Assembly: GCF_001194135.2 (NCBI RefSeq)
Contig: NC_068982.1
Location: forward strand, 136,689,008-136,753,007
Source: Octopus bimaculoides
Taxonomy: Eukaryota
Length of the DNA stretch: 64,000 nt
Direction of reading: 5' to 3'
Made by a program: the position numbers and the translations under genes. The notes under the pieces were generated by a model. That model ran no database searches, was not told the DNA's origin, and saw only the letters and a program-made list of their open reading frames with translations. Of this stretch, positions 3,520-60,479 are shown piece after piece (positions within the stretch are counted from its first letter, which is position 1; each line of letters opens with the position of its first letter).

Positions 3520-3698
3520 GTGTTTTTTGTGTTTGTCCACCATTACCACCTGGCAGCGGATGTTGGTTTATTTACGTCCCCATAACGTAGCAGTTTCGCA
3601 AAGAGACTCAGAGAATGTTTCATACTTTAGAAATAAACCCTGGGTGACCTGGATCCATTTACGCCTTTCAAGGCGATGATGCCTCAACATGGCCACAA
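3520..3698 (+). mobile_element. SINE family A, decayed 3' half, tail-to-tail with the next copy
   Basis: TTTACGTCCCCATAACGTAGCAG..AAAGAGAC..CAACATGGCCACA after (GT)n. Confidence 0.65.
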
Positions 3699-4026
3699 TA
3701 TTCTTTTATTCTTTTACTTGTTTCATGACTGCGGCCATGCTGGAGCACCGGCTTTTAGGCAAACAAATCGACCCTAGGTCTTATTCTTTGTAAGCCTAGT
3801 ACCGCTAGGTTACGGGAATGTAAACACACCAATATCTATTGTCAAGCGACGTTGGGGGACAACCACAGACACGCACACACATATATACGACGAGCTTCTT
3901 TCAGATTCCGTCTTCCAGATCTACTCACAAGGCTTTGGTCGGCCCGAAGCTATAGCAGAAGGCACCTGCCCAATGTGCCACACGGTGGGACTGAAGCCAG
4001 AACCATGTGATTGGTAAGCAAGCTAC

Positions 4027-6278
4027 TTTATTTCATTTCAATTTGCCATAAAGGCAGTACGCAAGGAGTAACTACGGGCTGGACAAAAACATTAATGAGA
4101 TGAGATGAATGGTGATTAATATGGTATTAATTGGAGAAGACAGGAGCCGCCCGCCGAACTCTGCTTCTCTAAATCAATGTTCTTTTATAAATTAACACAT
4201 ACATTTACAATTTGAGGCTATAAACCTCTTACTTTACAGTTTCAATTTCAACTGTCTTTGAAATGAGGCACTTGCCTCTTCCACTTTTCTTTTCATGGGC
4301 CACAAGCCCGTTCAATATGAGGCACTCGTCCTCTTACATTTTACCGCTCGACCAGACTCCGTGCTTCACTTAAGCACCTCGCTGGTTCTTCATTGGGCAA
4401 CTTTAGCAAAAAGCGGAAAGTGTCTTTAGGGAAGGAATTCATCACCCTGCACAAGTCTGTCTTCCACACGACCACCGCAGTCACTTGCGGAGGCCAGCTA
4501 GGGTCCTTGGTACAGGTGAGGATCCCTCTCATCCGACCCTTCCTGGCAACCTTTTTTACAAAATTTTCTACGGACCCTCCCTTGTGGAAAAGGACTACAA
4601 ATTCCTCCTCCTCATAGGTCGAAGCCTCAGTTTCTACTGTCGGCGTCACAATTCCCACCGACAGGCTTTCCTCCGTTCGTGGCACAATTCCCACCAACAG
4701 AGTTTCGGGACACGCCGGCGGTGCACTACCGGGCTCAGGCCGTGTCCCGTTCTTCTTTTTCTTCTTTTTTTGGGGGGCCACTGGAACAGGACGCACTTCC
4801 ACCTTAGCCAGAAGGTCCTCCTCCTCCCCCGCAACTTTCGGTGAACAACCATTATTGCCCACCTTCTTTCTTTTCTTCCCTTTCTTCGAGGAGGTGGAAA
4901 CCTCCTCGACTTTCTCCGTCTCTCCCTGCACTGGGAGAGCAGGGGGAACAACATTTATTAACTATTCCAGGACCTTACTCTGGTCCTGGGGGAAGTCCTT
5001 CTTAATATGACCNNNNNNNNNNNNNNNNNNNNNNNNNNNNNNNNNNNNNNNNNNNNNNNNNNNNNNNNNNNNNNNNNNNNNNNNNNNNNNNNNNNNNNNN
5101 NNNNNNNNNNNNNNNNNNNNNNNNNNNNNNNNNNNNNNNNNNNNNNNNNNNNNNNNNNNNNNNNNNNNNNNNNNNNNNNNNNNNNNNNNNNNNNNNNNNN
5201 NNNNNNNNNNNNNNNNNNNNNNNNNNNNNNNNNNNNNNNNNNNNNNNNNNNNNNNNNNNNNNNNNNNNNNNNNNNNNNNNNNNNNNNNNNNNNNNNNNNN
5301 NNNNNNNNNNNNNNNNNNNNNNNNNNNNNNNNNNNNNNNNNNNNNNNNNNNNNNNNNNNNNNNNNNNNNNNNNNNNNNNNNNNNNNNNNNNNNNNNNNNN
5401 NNNNNNNNNNNNNNNNNNNNNNNNNNNNNNNNNNNNNNNNNNNNNNNNNNNNNNNNNNNNNNNNNNNNNNNNNNNNNNNNNNNNNNNNNNNNNNNNNNNN
5501 NNNNNNNNNNNNNNNNNNNNNNNNNNNNNNNNNNNNNNNNNNNNNNNNNNNNNNNNNNNNNNNNNNNNNNNNNNNNNNNNNNNNNNNNNNNNNNNNNNNN
5601 NNNNNNNNNNNNNNNNNNNNNNNNNNNNNNNNNNNNNNNNNNNNNNNNNNNNNNNNNNNNNNNNNNNNNNNNNNNNNNNNNNNNNNNNNNNNNNNNNNNA
5701 GTTCATAAAAGAAAGAGAAAGGAAGTACAACAGTTCAAGAAGAATAAATAAAATATGAAGTTCCAGGATAACAAATTTTCAGGCCACAACGATTTGATCC
5801 CGGCACCGCTGCAGTCGTCACTTTGCTGGTAAAAATTAAATCCTTTGCGTAGTTCCACGTGGTGTAGTTCAAAGCAAGAGGAAGACTTTTCTTCAAATTT
5901 ATTAGCTTTCAAAACTTGGTTTGGAAATCATTAACTCCTTTTCTTTTTTAAACAAAGTTCACAATATCTATCTGTAGTTTTCAAATCATGACTTGAAGAC
6001 AACAAACTTCTACAAACTAAGTTCACAATTTTGGGAGGAGTGATACCCCCAAAACACTCTTTTCACCGCTAAGTGAGACTTTAAGCACAACCACAGGCAG
6101 ACAAATGCGTGGAATTCAGTGGAGATTTCTTGTTCGACATAAATATAAATAAACACGAGCAACAAACCCCCACTAAATCCAAAAATCACAAAAGTCTTAC
6201 CTGTAGCTGTACGTCAAAAATTCACAACGCTGTCATTCAGCGACGTGACAGCAGGAGCGACAAAAAACACGTCCTTTC
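4027..6278 (-). mobile_element. Non-LTR-like retroelement (Tx1-like by inference), ORF1 only visible, with 14-bp TSD
   Basis: TSD ggtaagcaagctac (4013-4026) / ggtaagcatgctac (6279-6292), 13/14 identical. The 3' end is GAAATGAAATAAA. Contains an ORF at 4341-4931 and an N-gap at 5013-5699. Confidence 0.8.
4341..5012 (-). pseudogene. gag-like ORF1 of the inserted element, one in-frame TAG at 4964-4962, continues into the gap
   Basis: Frame reads GHIKKDFPQDQSKVLE*LINVVPPALPVQGETEKVEEVSTSSKKGKKRKK...EARSLVER*. GHIKKD(F)P resembles the end of a CCHC zinc knuckle (GHxxxxCP), followed by a Lys-rich linker. Confidence 0.6.
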
Positions 6279-6333
6279 GGTAAGCATGCTACTTACCACA
6301 CAGCTACTCCTCCGCATGTATGATAAATATCTA

Positions 6334-6575
6334 GGGTGGCGAGCTGGCAGTATCGTTAGCACGCCGGGCGAAATGCTTAGCGGTATTTCATCTGCCTTTA
6401 CGTTCTAAGTTCAAACTCCGCCGAGGTCGACTTTGCCTTCCATCTTTTCGGGGTGGATTAAATAAGTACTAACTACGTACTGGGGTAGTTGTAATCGACT
6501 TAAACCCTTTGTTTGTCCTTGTTTGTCCTTGTTTGTCCCCTCTATGTTTAGCCCCCTGTGAGCAATAAAGAAGTA
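6334..6575 (+). mobile_element. SINE family C (GGCGGCGAGCTGGCAG head, Meta-domain-like centre)
   Basis: GGCGAGCTGGCAG..GTTCAAACTCCGCCGAGGTCGACTTTGCCTTCCATC..GGGGT..AAGTAC; (TTGTTTGTCC)n tail. Confidence 0.85.
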
Positions 6576-23725: not shown

Positions 23726-23731
23726 TATATA

Positions 23732-23950
23732 AGGCGGCAAGCTGGCAGAATCGTTAGCAGGCTGGGCGAAATGCTTAGCGGTATTTCGTCTGTCTTTACG
23801 TTCTGAGTTCAAATTCCACCGATGTCGACTTTGCCTTTCATCCTTTTGGGGTCGATAAATTAAGTACAAGTTGCGTACTGGGGTCGATCTAGTCGACTTT
23901 CCCTCTCCCCCAACATTTCGGGCCTTGTGCCTATAATAGAAACAATTATT
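23732..23950 (+). mobile_element. SINE family C, full length
   Basis: GGCGGCAAGCTGGCAGAATCG..GTCGACTTTGCCTTTCATCCTTTTGGGGTCGATAAATTAAGTAC..GGGCCTTGTGCCTATA. Confidence 0.9.
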
Positions 23951-35457: not shown

Positions 35458-35675
35458 TTTCTACTACAGGCACATGGCCTGCCTGAAATTTTGTTGGGGT
35501 GGGGAATAGTCGATTACAACGATCCCTATGCATAACTGGTACATATTTTATCGACTACGAAAAGATGAAAGACAAAGTTGGCCTCGGTTCAAATTGAACT
35601 CAGATCGTAAAGCCGGATGAAACGCCACCAATCATGTTACCCGGCATGCTGACTGTTCTGCCAGCTCAACGCCTT
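35458..35675 (-). mobile_element. SINE family C
   Basis: Reverse complement of GAGCTGGCAGAACAGTCAGCATGCCGGG..TCTGAGTTCAATTTG..GGCCAACTTTGTCTTTCATC. Confidence 0.8.
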
Positions 35676-43996: not shown

Positions 43997-45153
43997 CACC
44001 ATCAGCACCATATTGCGTCCAAGTTTTGCCTGAAGGTCAGTAATTCCAAGGAAGGGATAGATCGATTAGATCGACCCCAGTACGAAACTGGTACTTATTT
44101 TATCGACCCCGAAAGGATGAAAGGCAAAAATCATCCTTAAGTGGAATATGAATGCAGAATGTAAAGACGGACGAAATGTCCCTAAGCATTTCGACCGGCG
44201 TGCTAACGATTCTGCCTGTTCCATATTAGCTTCCTGGTTAATCATCATTATCAGCACTGCTAACATCGTCATCGTTTACAACGATTATTGTTTTGTATCG
44301 TCAGCAACATCGGCATCAACAACATCGATATCAGTAACAACAATAATTCGAAGATGTTGTCGATGACTGATGAAAGGAAAATTTTAAACGTATTAGCGAG
44401 AACAGACGGAAAGGAATGGAAACAAAAGAAAAAACTGAAAAATCTATCAGCAACGAGATTATCGTAGCAATAATCAAAATTACCATCATGGCTTTCATCG
44501 TTAAACTTTTTTCTGGCTCTTCGACCTCGTCGTCGTCGTCACCCTAGTAAACATCACCATCATCATTATCATCATCATCATCATCATCATCATTACCAGT
44601 ACCATCCTCATTTTGTGCTTCATTATCGTCGTCGTCGTGATCTTCATCATCATCATAATCATCATCACGATCATCATCACCATCATCATCATCATCATCA
44701 CCAGCATCACCATCATCATCATTACCATCATCATCACCATCAGTATCATCATCATCACCACTATCATCATTATCATCNNNNNNNNNNNNNNNNNNNNNNN
44801 NNNNNNNNNNNNNNNNNNNNNNNNNNNNNNNNNNNNNNNNNNNNNNNNNNNNNNNNNNNNNNNNNNNNNNNNNNNNNNNNNNNNNNNNNNNNNNNNNNNN
44901 NNNNNNNNNNNNNNNNNNNNNNNNNNNNNNNNNNNNNNNNNNNNNNNNNNNNNNNNNNATCCTTATCACCACTACCATCATCATCATCATAATCATTATT
45001 GTCATAATGTCTGTCTATCAGCTTCAGCAATACCTTCATAGTTCGCCATCATCGTCATCATCATCATTATCGAAGTCATCACCATTGCCCATCGTAATTC
45101 TTCACATCATCATCACCACCACCATCATCGTCATCATCATCGTCGTCGTCATG

Positions 45154-58169: not shown

Positions 58170-58242
<73 letters not shown>

Positions 58243-58259
58243 ATATAAATATATATATA

Positions 58260-58785
58260 GGCGCAGGAGTCGCTGCATGGTAAGAAGCTTGTTATCCGAG
58301 GACTTGTTGGTCGGTGGGCGCTGATATCCCTCTCATCTTATCATTATGTTTTCATTTCATCTCATTTTGTCTACGTTCAGCCCACTAGCTTCTAACTTTG
58401 TACTGCCTTTGTGGCAAATTTTATGAAATAAAGAATCTTGCTGACCAAACACATGGTCCTGGGTTCAGTCCTACTGCGTGGCATCTTGGCCAAGTGTCTT
58501 CGGGCCGACCAAAGCATTGTGAGTGGATTTGGTCTACGGAAACTGAAAGAAGCCCATCGTATATATATATGTAAGGGGTGTGTGTGTATGTTTGTTTGTC
58601 TGTATTTGTCCCTCCATCATCGCTTGACAACGTATGTTGGTGTGCTTACGTCCCAGTAACGTAGCGGTTCGATAGAATAAGTACTAGGTTTACAAAGAAT
58701 AAGTCCCGGGGTCAATTTGTTCGACTAAAGGCGGTGCTCCAGCATGGCCGCAATCACATGGCTGAAACAAGTAAAAGAGTAAAAT
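58260..58785 (+). mobile_element. SINE family A copy split by a 135-bp insertion
   Basis: Head GGCGCAGGAGTCGCTGCATGGTAAGAAGCTTG; resumes GAATCTTGCTGACCAAACACATGG at 58433. Confidence 0.9.
58298..58432 (+). mobile_element. 5'-truncated relative of the 4027-6278 element
   Basis: 3' end GTACTGCCTTTGTGGCAAATTTTATGAAATAAA versus GTACTGCCTTTATGGCAAATTGAAATGAAATAAA; degenerate 14-bp TSD gaagcttgttatcc (58284-58297) / gaatcttgctgacc (58433-58446). Confidence 0.85.
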
Positions 58786-59041
58786 ACCACATGGAAGAAG
58801 CGGACCTGATTTTACCCCTCGATCAGTGTTACTCAGTGACGAGAATAGAGTGATCATTTACAAAGTTTTAAATCACTGTGATATGGGTATGTCCTATTTA
58901 CATTTTCCATTCCTTTCGTCTATGGCACGGGAGTTTTAAGATTTTACTGCTCATTCCCCTGATTTCGCCCTTGTGTACAAGTGAAAACTGTGGTTTTTAG
59001 CTGTTTTGACTGCTATTTTTAGCATACTGTTGCTACAGTAT

Positions 59042-60224: not shown

Positions 60225-60442
60225 ATATTCTTGTCTATTCTAAGTACAAGGCCCGGAGTTTTGGGGGAGGGGCCAGTCGATTAGATCGACCCCAGTACGC
60301 AACTAGTACTTAATTTATCGACCCCGAAAGGATCAAAGGCAAAATCGACCTCGGCGGAATTTGAACTCAGAACATAAAGACAGACGAAATGCTGCTAAGT
60401 ATTTCAACCGACGTGCTAACGTTTCTGCCAGCTCGCCTCCTT
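60225..60442 (-). mobile_element. SINE family C, full length
   Basis: Reverse complement of GGAGGCGAGCTGGCAGAAACGTTAGCACG..GGTCGATTTTGCCTTTGATCCTTTCGGGGTCGATAAATTAAGTAC. Confidence 0.9.
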
Positions 60443-60479
60443 ATCACTACCAAAATATTGATTCTGTCATGAACAAAGT

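What the first reader, a model, noticed from the sequence alone, without database searches (positions are those of the whole stretch)
4013..6292. Retroelement inserted at a precise site inside a SINE: candidate SINE-targeting, sequence-specific non-LTR family
Seen: a family A SINE is split between its head (6315-6279) and body (4026-3701). A 14-bp duplication GTAGC(A/T)TGCTTACC flanks a 2252-bp insert (including 687 N) that ends in GAAATGAAATAAA. A second, diverged relative sits at the same nucleotide of another family A copy (58298-58432). Established: Tx1-clade and RLE-type non-LTR elements include sequence-specific families that target tRNA arrays, U2 snRNA, microsatellites or other transposons. 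Inference: this is a lineage that uses an abundant SINE as its landing pad. I do not know of a description of it, but could not check Repbase or Dfam.
Basis: partly seen in the sequence, partly recalled or inferred. Interest (0 to 1): 0.88.

Follow-up and report, generated by a model that had tools for sequence, protein, structure and literature searches.

The report
Retroelement that lands in one SINE site
An octopus mobile element that carries a gag-like gene but no reverse transcriptase has inserted, three separate times, at exactly the same nucleotide of the genome's abundant tRNA-derived SINE, so it is very probably a site-specific retroelement using that SINE as a landing pad: a new target for a strategy already known.

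Summary
A ~350-nt tRNA-like SINE is split at 6279-6320 (head) and 3691-4026 (body) by a 2252-nt insert, which includes 687 N. The insert is flanked by a 14-16-nt duplication. A 135-nt relative sits at the same SINE nucleotide, in the same orientation, at 58298-58432.

I found a third, non-orthologous, gap-free copy in Octopus sinensis whose 5' end joins the same SINE nucleotide. The two sides of the assembly gap are collinear with this copy. The gap therefore hides about 578 nt, roughly the first 193 codons of one gene.

The flanking SINE copies are not each other's closest relatives. The three inserts differ by 24-33% (dS about 1.1). They are therefore independent insertions, not copies of one event.

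The insert has no LTRs, no inverted terminal repeats and no ribozyme. It also has no reverse transcriptase or endonuclease. It encodes one ORF1/gag-like protein of about 420 aa with a CCHC knuckle, under purifying selection (dN/dS 0.26).

Best reading: a non-autonomous, target-specific non-LTR-type retroelement mobilised in trans by an unidentified site-specific LINE; Tx1 is the leading candidate clade. Elements that target other transposons are already known, so this is a new member of that kind. Genome-wide junction statistics and the autonomous partner could not be obtained with these tools.

The parts
6279..6320 (-). Head of SINE copy A (tRNA-like part with box A). Its last 14 nt, 6279-6292 (GTAGCATGCTTACC), are target-duplication copy 1.
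4027..6278 (-). Element copy A: 2252 nt as written, including 687 N. It is in the same orientation as the SINE.
5707..6278 (-). 5' untranslated region of copy A, with no ORF in any frame. It is homologous to L001 9488-10000. It contains a donor-like CAG|GTAAGA (GT at 6200-6199) at the same relative place as in copy C. The intron reading is unverified.
6110..6182 (-). 73-nt hairpin in the 5' UTR, conserved between copies A and C. Changes keep pairing through G-U.
   Evidence: 23-pair stem: 7 one-sided changes and 1 compensatory change, none broken; z = -6.7 in A, -7.5 in C
5704..5706 (-). Probable start codon of the ORF, by approximate alignment with the ATG of P0001 in copy C.
   Evidence: inference
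5013..5699 (.). Assembly gap. By homology with copy C it hides about 578 nt, roughly codons 3-195 of the ORF.
4341..5012 (-). C-terminal 223 codons of the ORF1/gag-like gene. It contains the end of a CCHC knuckle (GHIKKDF, 5012-4992), an in-frame stop at 4964-4962 that replaces Gln of the relative (VLE*LI versus VLEQLI), a Lys-rich linker and a ~90-aa C-terminal domain. The stop codon is 4343-4341.
4027..4340 (-). 3' untranslated region. The last ~125 nt are shared with copy B. It holds a small conserved hairpin TGCC-N5-GGCA at 4044-4056, and the element ends in AATAAA (4032-4027) with no poly(A).
3691..4026 (-). Body of SINE copy A. Its first 14 nt, 4026-4013 (GTAGCTTGCTTACC), are target-duplication copy 2.
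58261..58297 (+). Head of SINE copy B. The last 14 nt, 58284-58297 (GAAGCTTGTTATCC), are duplication copy 1.
58298..58432 (+). Element copy B, 135 nt. About 11 nt resemble the 5' terminus of A (GAGGACTTGTT versus GAAAGGACGTGTT). They are followed by the 3'-terminal ~123 nt of the family.
58433..58790 (+). Body of SINE copy B. The first 14 nt, 58433-58446 (GAATCTTGCTGACC), are duplication copy 2.

Best explanation
A, B (this window) and C (Octopus sinensis) are independent insertions of one old family of target-specific retroelements of the non-LTR (target-primed reverse transcription) type.

The family integrates in sense orientation at one position of the tRNA-derived head of the abundant octopus SINE: GGTAA^GTAGCTTGCTTACC^AACC, between the box A-like and box B-like motifs. 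The inferred mechanism is as follows. A sequence-specific endonuclease nicks the bottom strand opposite A^G. That 3' end primes reverse transcription at the element's last A. The top strand is cut 14 nt downstream, which gives the 14-16-nt duplication.

The element itself is not autonomous. It encodes only an ORF1/gag-like protein of about 420 aa: an N-terminal domain, one CCHC knuckle, a Lys-rich linker and a C-terminal domain. Its RNA must therefore be used in trans by the ORF2 protein of an unidentified site-specific LINE. Tx1 is the most likely clade. Alternatively, copy A is an ORF2-deleted derivative of that LINE.

Shown here: same-site, same-orientation insertion in three copies; the duplication; absence of LTR, TIR, RT and EN; purifying selection on the ORF; conserved 5' hairpin and 3' end.

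Inferred: the TPRT mechanism, the trans partner and the clade.

Speculative: because the element ends exactly in AAUAAA, its transcript would be cleaved some 10-30 nt further on, inside the SINE. It would then carry the 14-nt target sequence, which could anneal to the nicked target and set the precise junction.
For: Same nucleotide, same orientation. A and B are shown. In C the head ends ...GTAGCTTGCTTCC and the element follows. Random integration has p about 7.6e-5 per event, and the target 22-mer occurs only in SINE copies.

Independence. SINE A and SINE B are 81% identical, less than each is to other copies (84-85%). The duplications share no derived changes. The elements differ by 24-33%, with dS about 1.1. 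A and C have different flanks and lie in different species.

Retroelement anatomy. There are no LTRs or TIRs and the duplication is 14-16 nt. The 3' terminus is conserved. Both long copies start at nearly the same 5' position.

Gag-like gene. The only relative is P0001, with FHLCLEPGHIKKNC and a weak zf-CCHC hit at E = 0.058. dN/dS is 0.26 over 132 codons.

No RT or EN was found.

Precedent. Tx1-clade families target DNA transposons and LTR elements and give, for example, a 16-nt duplication (PMC4494074). RRM plus CCHC ORF1 is consistent with Tx1 (PMC5203782). O. vulgaris has 13 recently active L1-Tx1 families (PMC13282606).
Against: Only three copies were examined, and the third was found through the element itself. 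No genome-wide junction table could be made.

No reverse transcriptase is linked to the family, so the class (non-LTR) and the clade rest on anatomy and analogy.

The CCHC hit is below Pfam's threshold, and the knuckle is degenerate in both copies (F for C). The AlphaFold model of P0001 is unusable (pLDDT 38), so an RRM fold is not shown.

Copy C lacks its 3' end, so there are only two 3' junctions.

A conserved GT donor-like site and, in C, a polypyrimidine tract plus AG before the ATG suggest an intron. An intron would be unusual for an RNA-mediated element.
Confidence: 0.7

Rival explanations
1. There was one ancestral insertion into a SINE master copy. The composite (SINE head + insert + SINE body) then spread by SINE retroposition or by segmental duplication. 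On this view the shared site reflects common descent, not targeting.
For: The SINE is highly repetitive and mobile. B is short enough (135 nt) to ride inside a SINE transcript. SINE copies A and B both have overlapping deletions in the same body region.
Against: SINE A and SINE B are no closer to each other (81%) than to empty copies (84-85%). The duplications share no derived substitutions. The inserts differ more (24-33%, dS about 1.1) than the SINEs do. A 2.2-kb insert separating box A from box B would not be retroposed as a Pol III SINE. A, B and C have three different insert lengths that end at the same two junctions.
Confidence: 0.07
2. The true, ancestral target is the parental tRNA gene (or a tRNA-like sequence in general). 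SINE heads are hit only because they retain that 20-30-nt sequence. The family would then be a tRNA-gene-targeting lineage comparable to Dewa.
For: The site lies in the tRNA-derived head, in the D-arm/anticodon-arm region between the box A-like and box B-like motifs (my reading of the sequence). The element lineages (dS about 1.1) look older than the SINE copies, which differ pairwise by 10-29%, mostly 15-20%.
Against: All three copies seen are in SINEs, not tRNA genes. ARAGORN finds no tRNA gene in the window. This is a refinement of the best explanation rather than a contradiction of it.
Confidence: 0.15
3. The insert is a non-autonomous DNA transposon or another integrase-driven element with sequence-specific integration, comparable to Dada elements that target small-RNA genes.
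For: Target-specific DNA transposons exist (PMC3706591, listed). The possible intron in the 5' UTR would be easier to explain for a DNA-mediated element.
Against: There are no terminal inverted repeats and no transposase. A 14-16-nt duplication is longer than the duplications I recall for known cut-and-paste superfamilies (from memory). The ends are asymmetric, the 3' end is conserved and A-rich, and one copy is shortened. These features are typical of target-primed reverse transcription.
Confidence: 0.04
4. The apparent split SINE at copy A is a scaffolding artefact, with two unrelated contigs joined across the gap.
For: A 687-N gap lies inside the insert. The duplicated sequence is SINE sequence and would be found in any two SINE copies.
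Against: Both sides are collinear with the gap-free copy C. The head ends and the body starts at exactly the positions seen in the gap-free copy B. B and C do not depend on the gap at all.
Confidence: 0.02

Closest known systems
Tx1-clade target-specific LINEs that use another transposon as landing pad: Tx1L in Tx1D (piggyBac); Tx1-Mar and its dependent SINEU-3 in Mariner-N4_AMi; Tx1-8_Crp and Tx1-4_AMi in LTR elements; Tx1-9_AMi in Harbinger (Kojima 2015, PMC4494074)
   Same: Insertion at one sequence inside an interspersed repeat. The target duplication is long (16 nt for SINEU-3, 14-16 nt here). Non-autonomous passengers share the target. An ORF1 with a CCHC knuckle is consistent with the type I ORF1 reported for Tx1 (PMC5203782). 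Tx1 families are recently active in octopus (PMC13282606).
   Different: The target here is a SINE (its tRNA-derived head), which none of the papers I could search lists as a target. No APE or RT is available to place this family in the Tx1 tree. The copies seen carry only an ORF1-like gene.
R1 elements of arthropod 28S rDNA (R1 clade, APE-type); features recalled from memory
   Same: Strict site and orientation specificity, a 14-nt target duplication, no poly(A) tail, and an ORF1 with CCHC motifs. Read-through target sequence in the transcript has been proposed to set the junction.
   Different: R1 targets rRNA genes, has three CCHC motifs and an ORF2, and is known from arthropods. R1 is not listed among the recently active LINE groups of O. 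vulgaris. Membership is untested.
HAL1, the 'half-L1' ORF1-only derivatives of mammalian L1; from memory
   Same: A non-autonomous retroelement that keeps a selected ORF1 and depends on ORF2 protein supplied in trans.
   Different: HAL1 is not target-specific and has a type II ORF1. It is not shown here that ORF1-only is the family's native state rather than a deletion in copy A.
SIDEs, the short internally deleted derivatives of R2 and R1 (PMC3414825)
   Same: Copy B appears to keep the 5' terminus (about 11 nt) and the 3'-terminal ~123 nt of the family, and it uses the same target.
   Different: The 5' match in B is short (p about 0.02). No 5' ribozyme is present.
Dewa (a non-LTR element cited in PMC3706591; its clade and tRNA-array target are from memory) and Dada DNA transposons (tRNA and snRNA genes; PMC3706591, PMC8869645)
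   Same: The target lies within a tRNA-type sequence present in many copies.
   Different: The target copies here are dispersed SINEs, not tRNA genes or arrays. There are no TIRs or transposase, unlike Dada.

Membership tests
Non-LTR (TPRT) retroelement, autonomous LINE | ORF encoding reverse transcriptase plus APE or restriction-like endonuclease | tested here: not met
   No Pfam hit in the readable ORF. No RT or EN in other window ORFs or in the O. sinensis locus. The element is only about 2.2 kb and the gap matches ORF1 sequence.
Non-LTR (TPRT) retroelement, any (including non-autonomous) | No LTRs or TIRs; target duplication of roughly 10-20 nt; conserved 3' end; 5'-shortened or deleted copies | tested here: met
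   No terminal repeats and a 14-16-nt duplication. The 3' end is shared by A and B. B is 135 nt against 2.2 kb for A.
Non-LTR (TPRT) retroelement, any | ORF1 of a recognised type (RRM plus CCHC knuckle, type I) | tested here: inconclusive
   zf-CCHC E = 0.058, 14 bits against a cut-off of 20.8. The knuckle is degenerate in both copies. The RRM fold is not demonstrable (AF2 pLDDT 38; PDB search empty).
Target-specific retroelements | Independent copies at the same nucleotide and orientation of a repeated target | tested here: met
   Three of three 5' junctions and two of two 3' junctions. Independence is shown. The sample is small and no genome-wide count was made.
Tx1 clade | RT/APE phylogenetic placement within Tx1 | not testable with these tools
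   No RT sequence is linked to the family, and no octopus genome can be searched by DNA here.
R1 clade | RT phylogeny; ORF1 with three CCHC motifs; 14-nt duplication | tested here: inconclusive
   The duplication length fits. Only one CCHC motif is seen in P0001. No RT is available.
RLE-type site-specific LINEs (R2, R4/Dong, NeSL, Utopia) | Single ORF with N-terminal zinc fingers, RT and a C-terminal restriction-like endonuclease; no separate gag-like ORF1; often a 5' HDV-like ribozyme | tested here: not met
   The gene present is gag/ORF1-like with no RT or RLE. No ribozyme was found in A, B or C. A trans partner of this type is not excluded.
Penelope-like elements | RT plus GIY-YIG ORF; hammerhead ribozymes in terminal repeats; may retain an intron | tested here: not met
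   No hammerhead or other ribozyme. No terminal repeats. No RT or GIY-YIG. Only the possible intron fits.
Cut-and-paste DNA transposons (for example Dada) | Terminal inverted repeats, transposase, short fixed duplication | tested here: not met
   No TIRs and a 14-16-nt duplication. No transposase.

The most novel reading that the evidence does not exclude
An ancient, self-maintaining lineage of ORF1-only retroelements that is doubly parasitic. It borrows the ORF2 enzyme of a site-specific LINE, and it uses the octopus genome's most abundant SINE as a safe harbour. Its terminal AAUAAA would force read-through into the target, so that the transcript itself carries the 14-nt homing sequence. Two of nine SINE heads are occupied in a window not chosen for this feature. 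If that rate is typical, the family could number tens of thousands of copies and inactivate a measurable share of SINE Pol III promoters.
Probability: 0.25. Interest if true: 0.65.

Novelty: new member of a known kind. Interest (0 to 1): 0.45.

Why it matters
Target-specific retroelements show how a mobile element can multiply without harming its host, and they are being developed as tools for site-directed gene insertion. A lineage that homes to a SINE head would add a new class of landing pad: a dispersed, very high-copy, non-essential target.

It would also give a natural case of one retroelement disabling another's promoter, because the insertion separates box A from box B. This occurs in a genome whose SINE expansion has been linked to cephalopod genome reorganisation.

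The ORF1-only architecture under selection, if native, bears on how much of a LINE's machinery can be supplied in trans.

Tried and rejected
Protein searches with the 206-aa ORF found nothing in Pfam or in the word-indexed search. The full HMMER scan found only P0001. Searching again with P0001 and with a two-sequence profile at E <= 10 returned only P0001, so no autonomous partner could be reached through ORF1.

An exact-protein look-up of the window ORF found no record.

The AlphaFold2 model of P0001 was too poor (pLDDT 38) to use in a fold search. The PDB sequence search found nothing significant.

Rfam found no tRNA, HDV-like, hammerhead or twister ribozyme in the window or in copies A, B or C. 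ARAGORN found no tRNA.

Scans of the metagenome and viral contig collections with the conserved 3' motif gave only chance hits; the best was a bacterial gene.

The 3' 124 nt show no significant global fold (z = -0.4 and -1.3). Only a 4-bp hairpin is conserved.

Rejected: random coincidence, composite amplification and scaffolding artefact.
Full report
**What is in the sequence**

The window is octopus-type DNA. It has 16 assembly gaps and about eleven copies of a ~350-nt SINE with a tRNA-like head.

Copy A of this SINE lies on the minus strand and is split. Its head ends ...GGTAA-GTAGCATGCTTACC at 6279-6292. A foreign stretch follows from 6278 down to 4027. The SINE then resumes with GTAGCTTGCTTACC at 4026-4013 and runs to about 3691. 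The repeat finder independently reports the 16-nt duplication at 4013-4028 and 6279-6294 with 94% identity. It finds no long terminal repeats and no inverted terminal repeats.

Copy B lies on the plus strand and shows the same arrangement without any gap. The head ends at 58297 (GAAGCTTGTTATCC), the insert is 135 nt (58298-58432), and the body restarts with GAATCTTGCTGACC. The last ~125 nt of B align with the 3' end of A at 76% identity. Both end ...TGCC-N5-GGCAAATT...ATGAAATAAA.

The readable ORF of A (206 aa after an internal stop) had no Pfam hit and no word-indexed hit. An exhaustive HMMER scan found one relative, P0001, annotated 'uncharacterized protein LOC115225585 [Octopus sinensis]'.

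Its locus, L001 (CM016886.1), has no gaps. It contains a third copy, C. A's 5' piece (5700-6278) aligns with L001 9488 to about 10007. A's 3' piece (4027-5012) aligns with L001 10586-10965, in the same order and orientation.

The two sides of the gap therefore belong to one element. The gap stands for about 578 nt in C's terms, against 687 N written. That stretch would hold roughly codons 3-195 of the ORF.

No statement about reading frame across the gap is possible. With the nominal N count, the probable ATG (5706-5704) is one base out of frame with the ORF at 5012. With a C-like length it would be in frame.

**A third junction**

In C the SINE head ...GGCTGTGTGGTAAGTAGCTTGCTTCC is followed directly by the element's 5' end. 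That is the same SINE nucleotide (within about 1 nt) and the same orientation as in A and B.

C is not the orthologue of A. The flanks differ and identity is only 67-74%. C's homology with A stops at about 10965, and no SINE body follows within 10 kb. Its 3' junction is therefore lost.

**Chance or common descent?**

The 22-nt target occurs only within SINE copies in the window, with none expected by chance. An element without target preference would hit this nucleotide in this orientation with p about 7.6e-5 per insertion.

If the three copies came from one insertion that was later copied, three things should hold: the flanking SINEs should be each other's closest relatives, the duplications should share mutations, and the inserts should be no more diverged than the SINEs. 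None of these holds.

- SINE A and SINE B are 81% identical, while each is 84-85% identical to empty copies.
- The duplications differ at unrelated positions: 1 of 14 in A and 4 of 14 in B.
- The inserts differ by 24-33%, with synonymous divergence of about 1.1.

Independent, site-directed insertion by several diverged sublineages is the economical reading.

**What the element is**

By homology with C, copy A consists of the following parts.

- A ~570-nt non-coding leader.
- One ORF of about 420 codons.
- A 314-nt trailer that ends exactly in AATAAA with no poly(A).

The protein has an N-terminal ~190 aa known only from P0001. It then has a single CCHC knuckle: FHLCLEPGHIKKNC in P0001 and ...GHIKKDF in A. 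The Pfam zf-CCHC hit is weak (E = 0.058, below threshold). A Lys-rich linker and a ~90-aa C-terminal domain follow. A's internal stop replaces a Gln of P0001. C has a frameshift in the Lys run.

Between A and C, dN/dS is 0.26 over 132 codons. The gene was therefore under purifying selection while the sublineages diverged, as expected for a protein the element needs.

Nothing resembling reverse transcriptase, endonuclease or transposase is present in the element, the window or L001. No ribozyme family matches.

The leader holds a 73-nt hairpin conserved between A and C. All substitutions in the stem preserve pairing, and several do so through G-U, which points to function in the sense RNA (z = -6.7 and -7.5).

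A donor-like CAG|GTAAGA lies 78 nt from the 5' end in A, and AAG|GTAGGC lies at the equivalent place in C. C has a polypyrimidine tract plus AG just before the ATG, but A lacks that AG. The intron idea is a lead only.

B begins with about 11 nt that resemble A's 5' terminus (p about 0.02). It may therefore be an internally deleted copy rather than a simple 5' truncation.

**How it most likely works**

The anatomy points to target-primed reverse transcription at a site cut by a sequence-specific endonuclease. The relevant features are:

- asymmetric ends and a conserved 3' terminus;
- a 14-16-nt duplication;
- one shortened copy;
- a gag-like gene;
- strict site and orientation.

The inferred cuts are on the bottom strand opposite GGTAA^GTAGC and on the top strand 14 nt downstream, at CTTACC^AACC. 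The site lies in the tRNA-derived head between the box A-like and box B-like motifs (my reading of the sequence). Each insertion would therefore disable that SINE copy's Pol III promoter.

The element has no RT, so the enzyme must come in trans from an autonomous LINE. Alternatively, A is an ORF2-deleted copy of that LINE.

The element ends exactly in AAUAAA. Its transcript would therefore be processed 10-30 nt further on and would carry the SINE target sequence at its 3' end. That sequence could pair with the nicked target and fix the junction. This last step is my speculation.

**Comparison with what is known**

Site-specific non-LTR elements target rRNA, tRNA and snRNA genes, microsatellites, telomeres and other transposons (PMC5035012).

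Tx1-clade families in particular land in piggyBac, Mariner, Harbinger and LTR elements. Their dependent SINEs share the target and give a 16-nt duplication (PMC4494074). An ORF1 with RRM plus CCHC is consistent with Tx1 (PMC5203782). O. vulgaris has 13 recently active L1-Tx1 families (PMC13282606).

Tx1 is thus the leading candidate. Membership cannot be tested without an RT. An R1-like lineage (14-nt duplication, from memory) or an RLE-type partner remains possible.

I found no paper describing a SINE-targeting element in octopus or elsewhere in the searchable library. Repbase and Dfam could not be consulted.

**Verdict**

The element is a non-autonomous, ORF1-only relative of an unidentified site-specific LINE, not a LINE itself.

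It is a new member of a known kind, with a new type of target. Interest is moderate. It would rise if genome-wide data show high occupancy and a native ORF1-only architecture.

Noticed in passing
window 6110-6182 (-) and L001 9605-9678 (+): A very stable 73-74-nt hairpin shaped like a miRNA precursor lies in the element's leader. It is conserved between two copies that are otherwise about 27% diverged, and stem changes keep pairing through G-U. Rfam gives only sub-threshold hits to miRNA and snoRNA models.
   Followed up: partly
window 4631-4702 (-): A 36-nt tandem duplication at 72% identity lies inside the ORF (LSVGIVTPTVET / LLVGIVPRTEES). It is absent from the O. sinensis copy.
   Followed up: no
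window 6326-6570 (+), also 23726-23899, 60275-60443, 44062-44216, 35508-35667 and others: A second, unrelated SINE-like repeat family has about ten copies in the window. One copy abuts the 5' end of SINE copy A, and another directly follows SINE copy c23287.
   Followed up: partly
window 58177-58240: A long (CT)n microsatellite followed by (TA)n lies immediately upstream of SINE copy B.
   Followed up: no
L001 3012-4292 (+): An intact 426-aa ORF with C2H2 zinc-finger domains (14 stretches matched in Pfam) lies 5 kb upstream of element copy C in O. sinensis.
   Followed up: no
window SINE copies A (about 3760-3770) and B (about 58670-58680): Both occupied SINE copies carry deletions in the same body segment (around GGTTCGGCAAAAGAGACCGATAGAATAA) but with different end points. 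This may mark a SINE subfamily or may be coincidence.
   Followed up: no
L001 10965-11010: Homology of copy C with copy A ends in a CA/TG-rich, microsatellite-like stretch. The 3' third of the element and the SINE body are missing within 10 kb, which suggests a deletion or a large insertion.
   Followed up: partly
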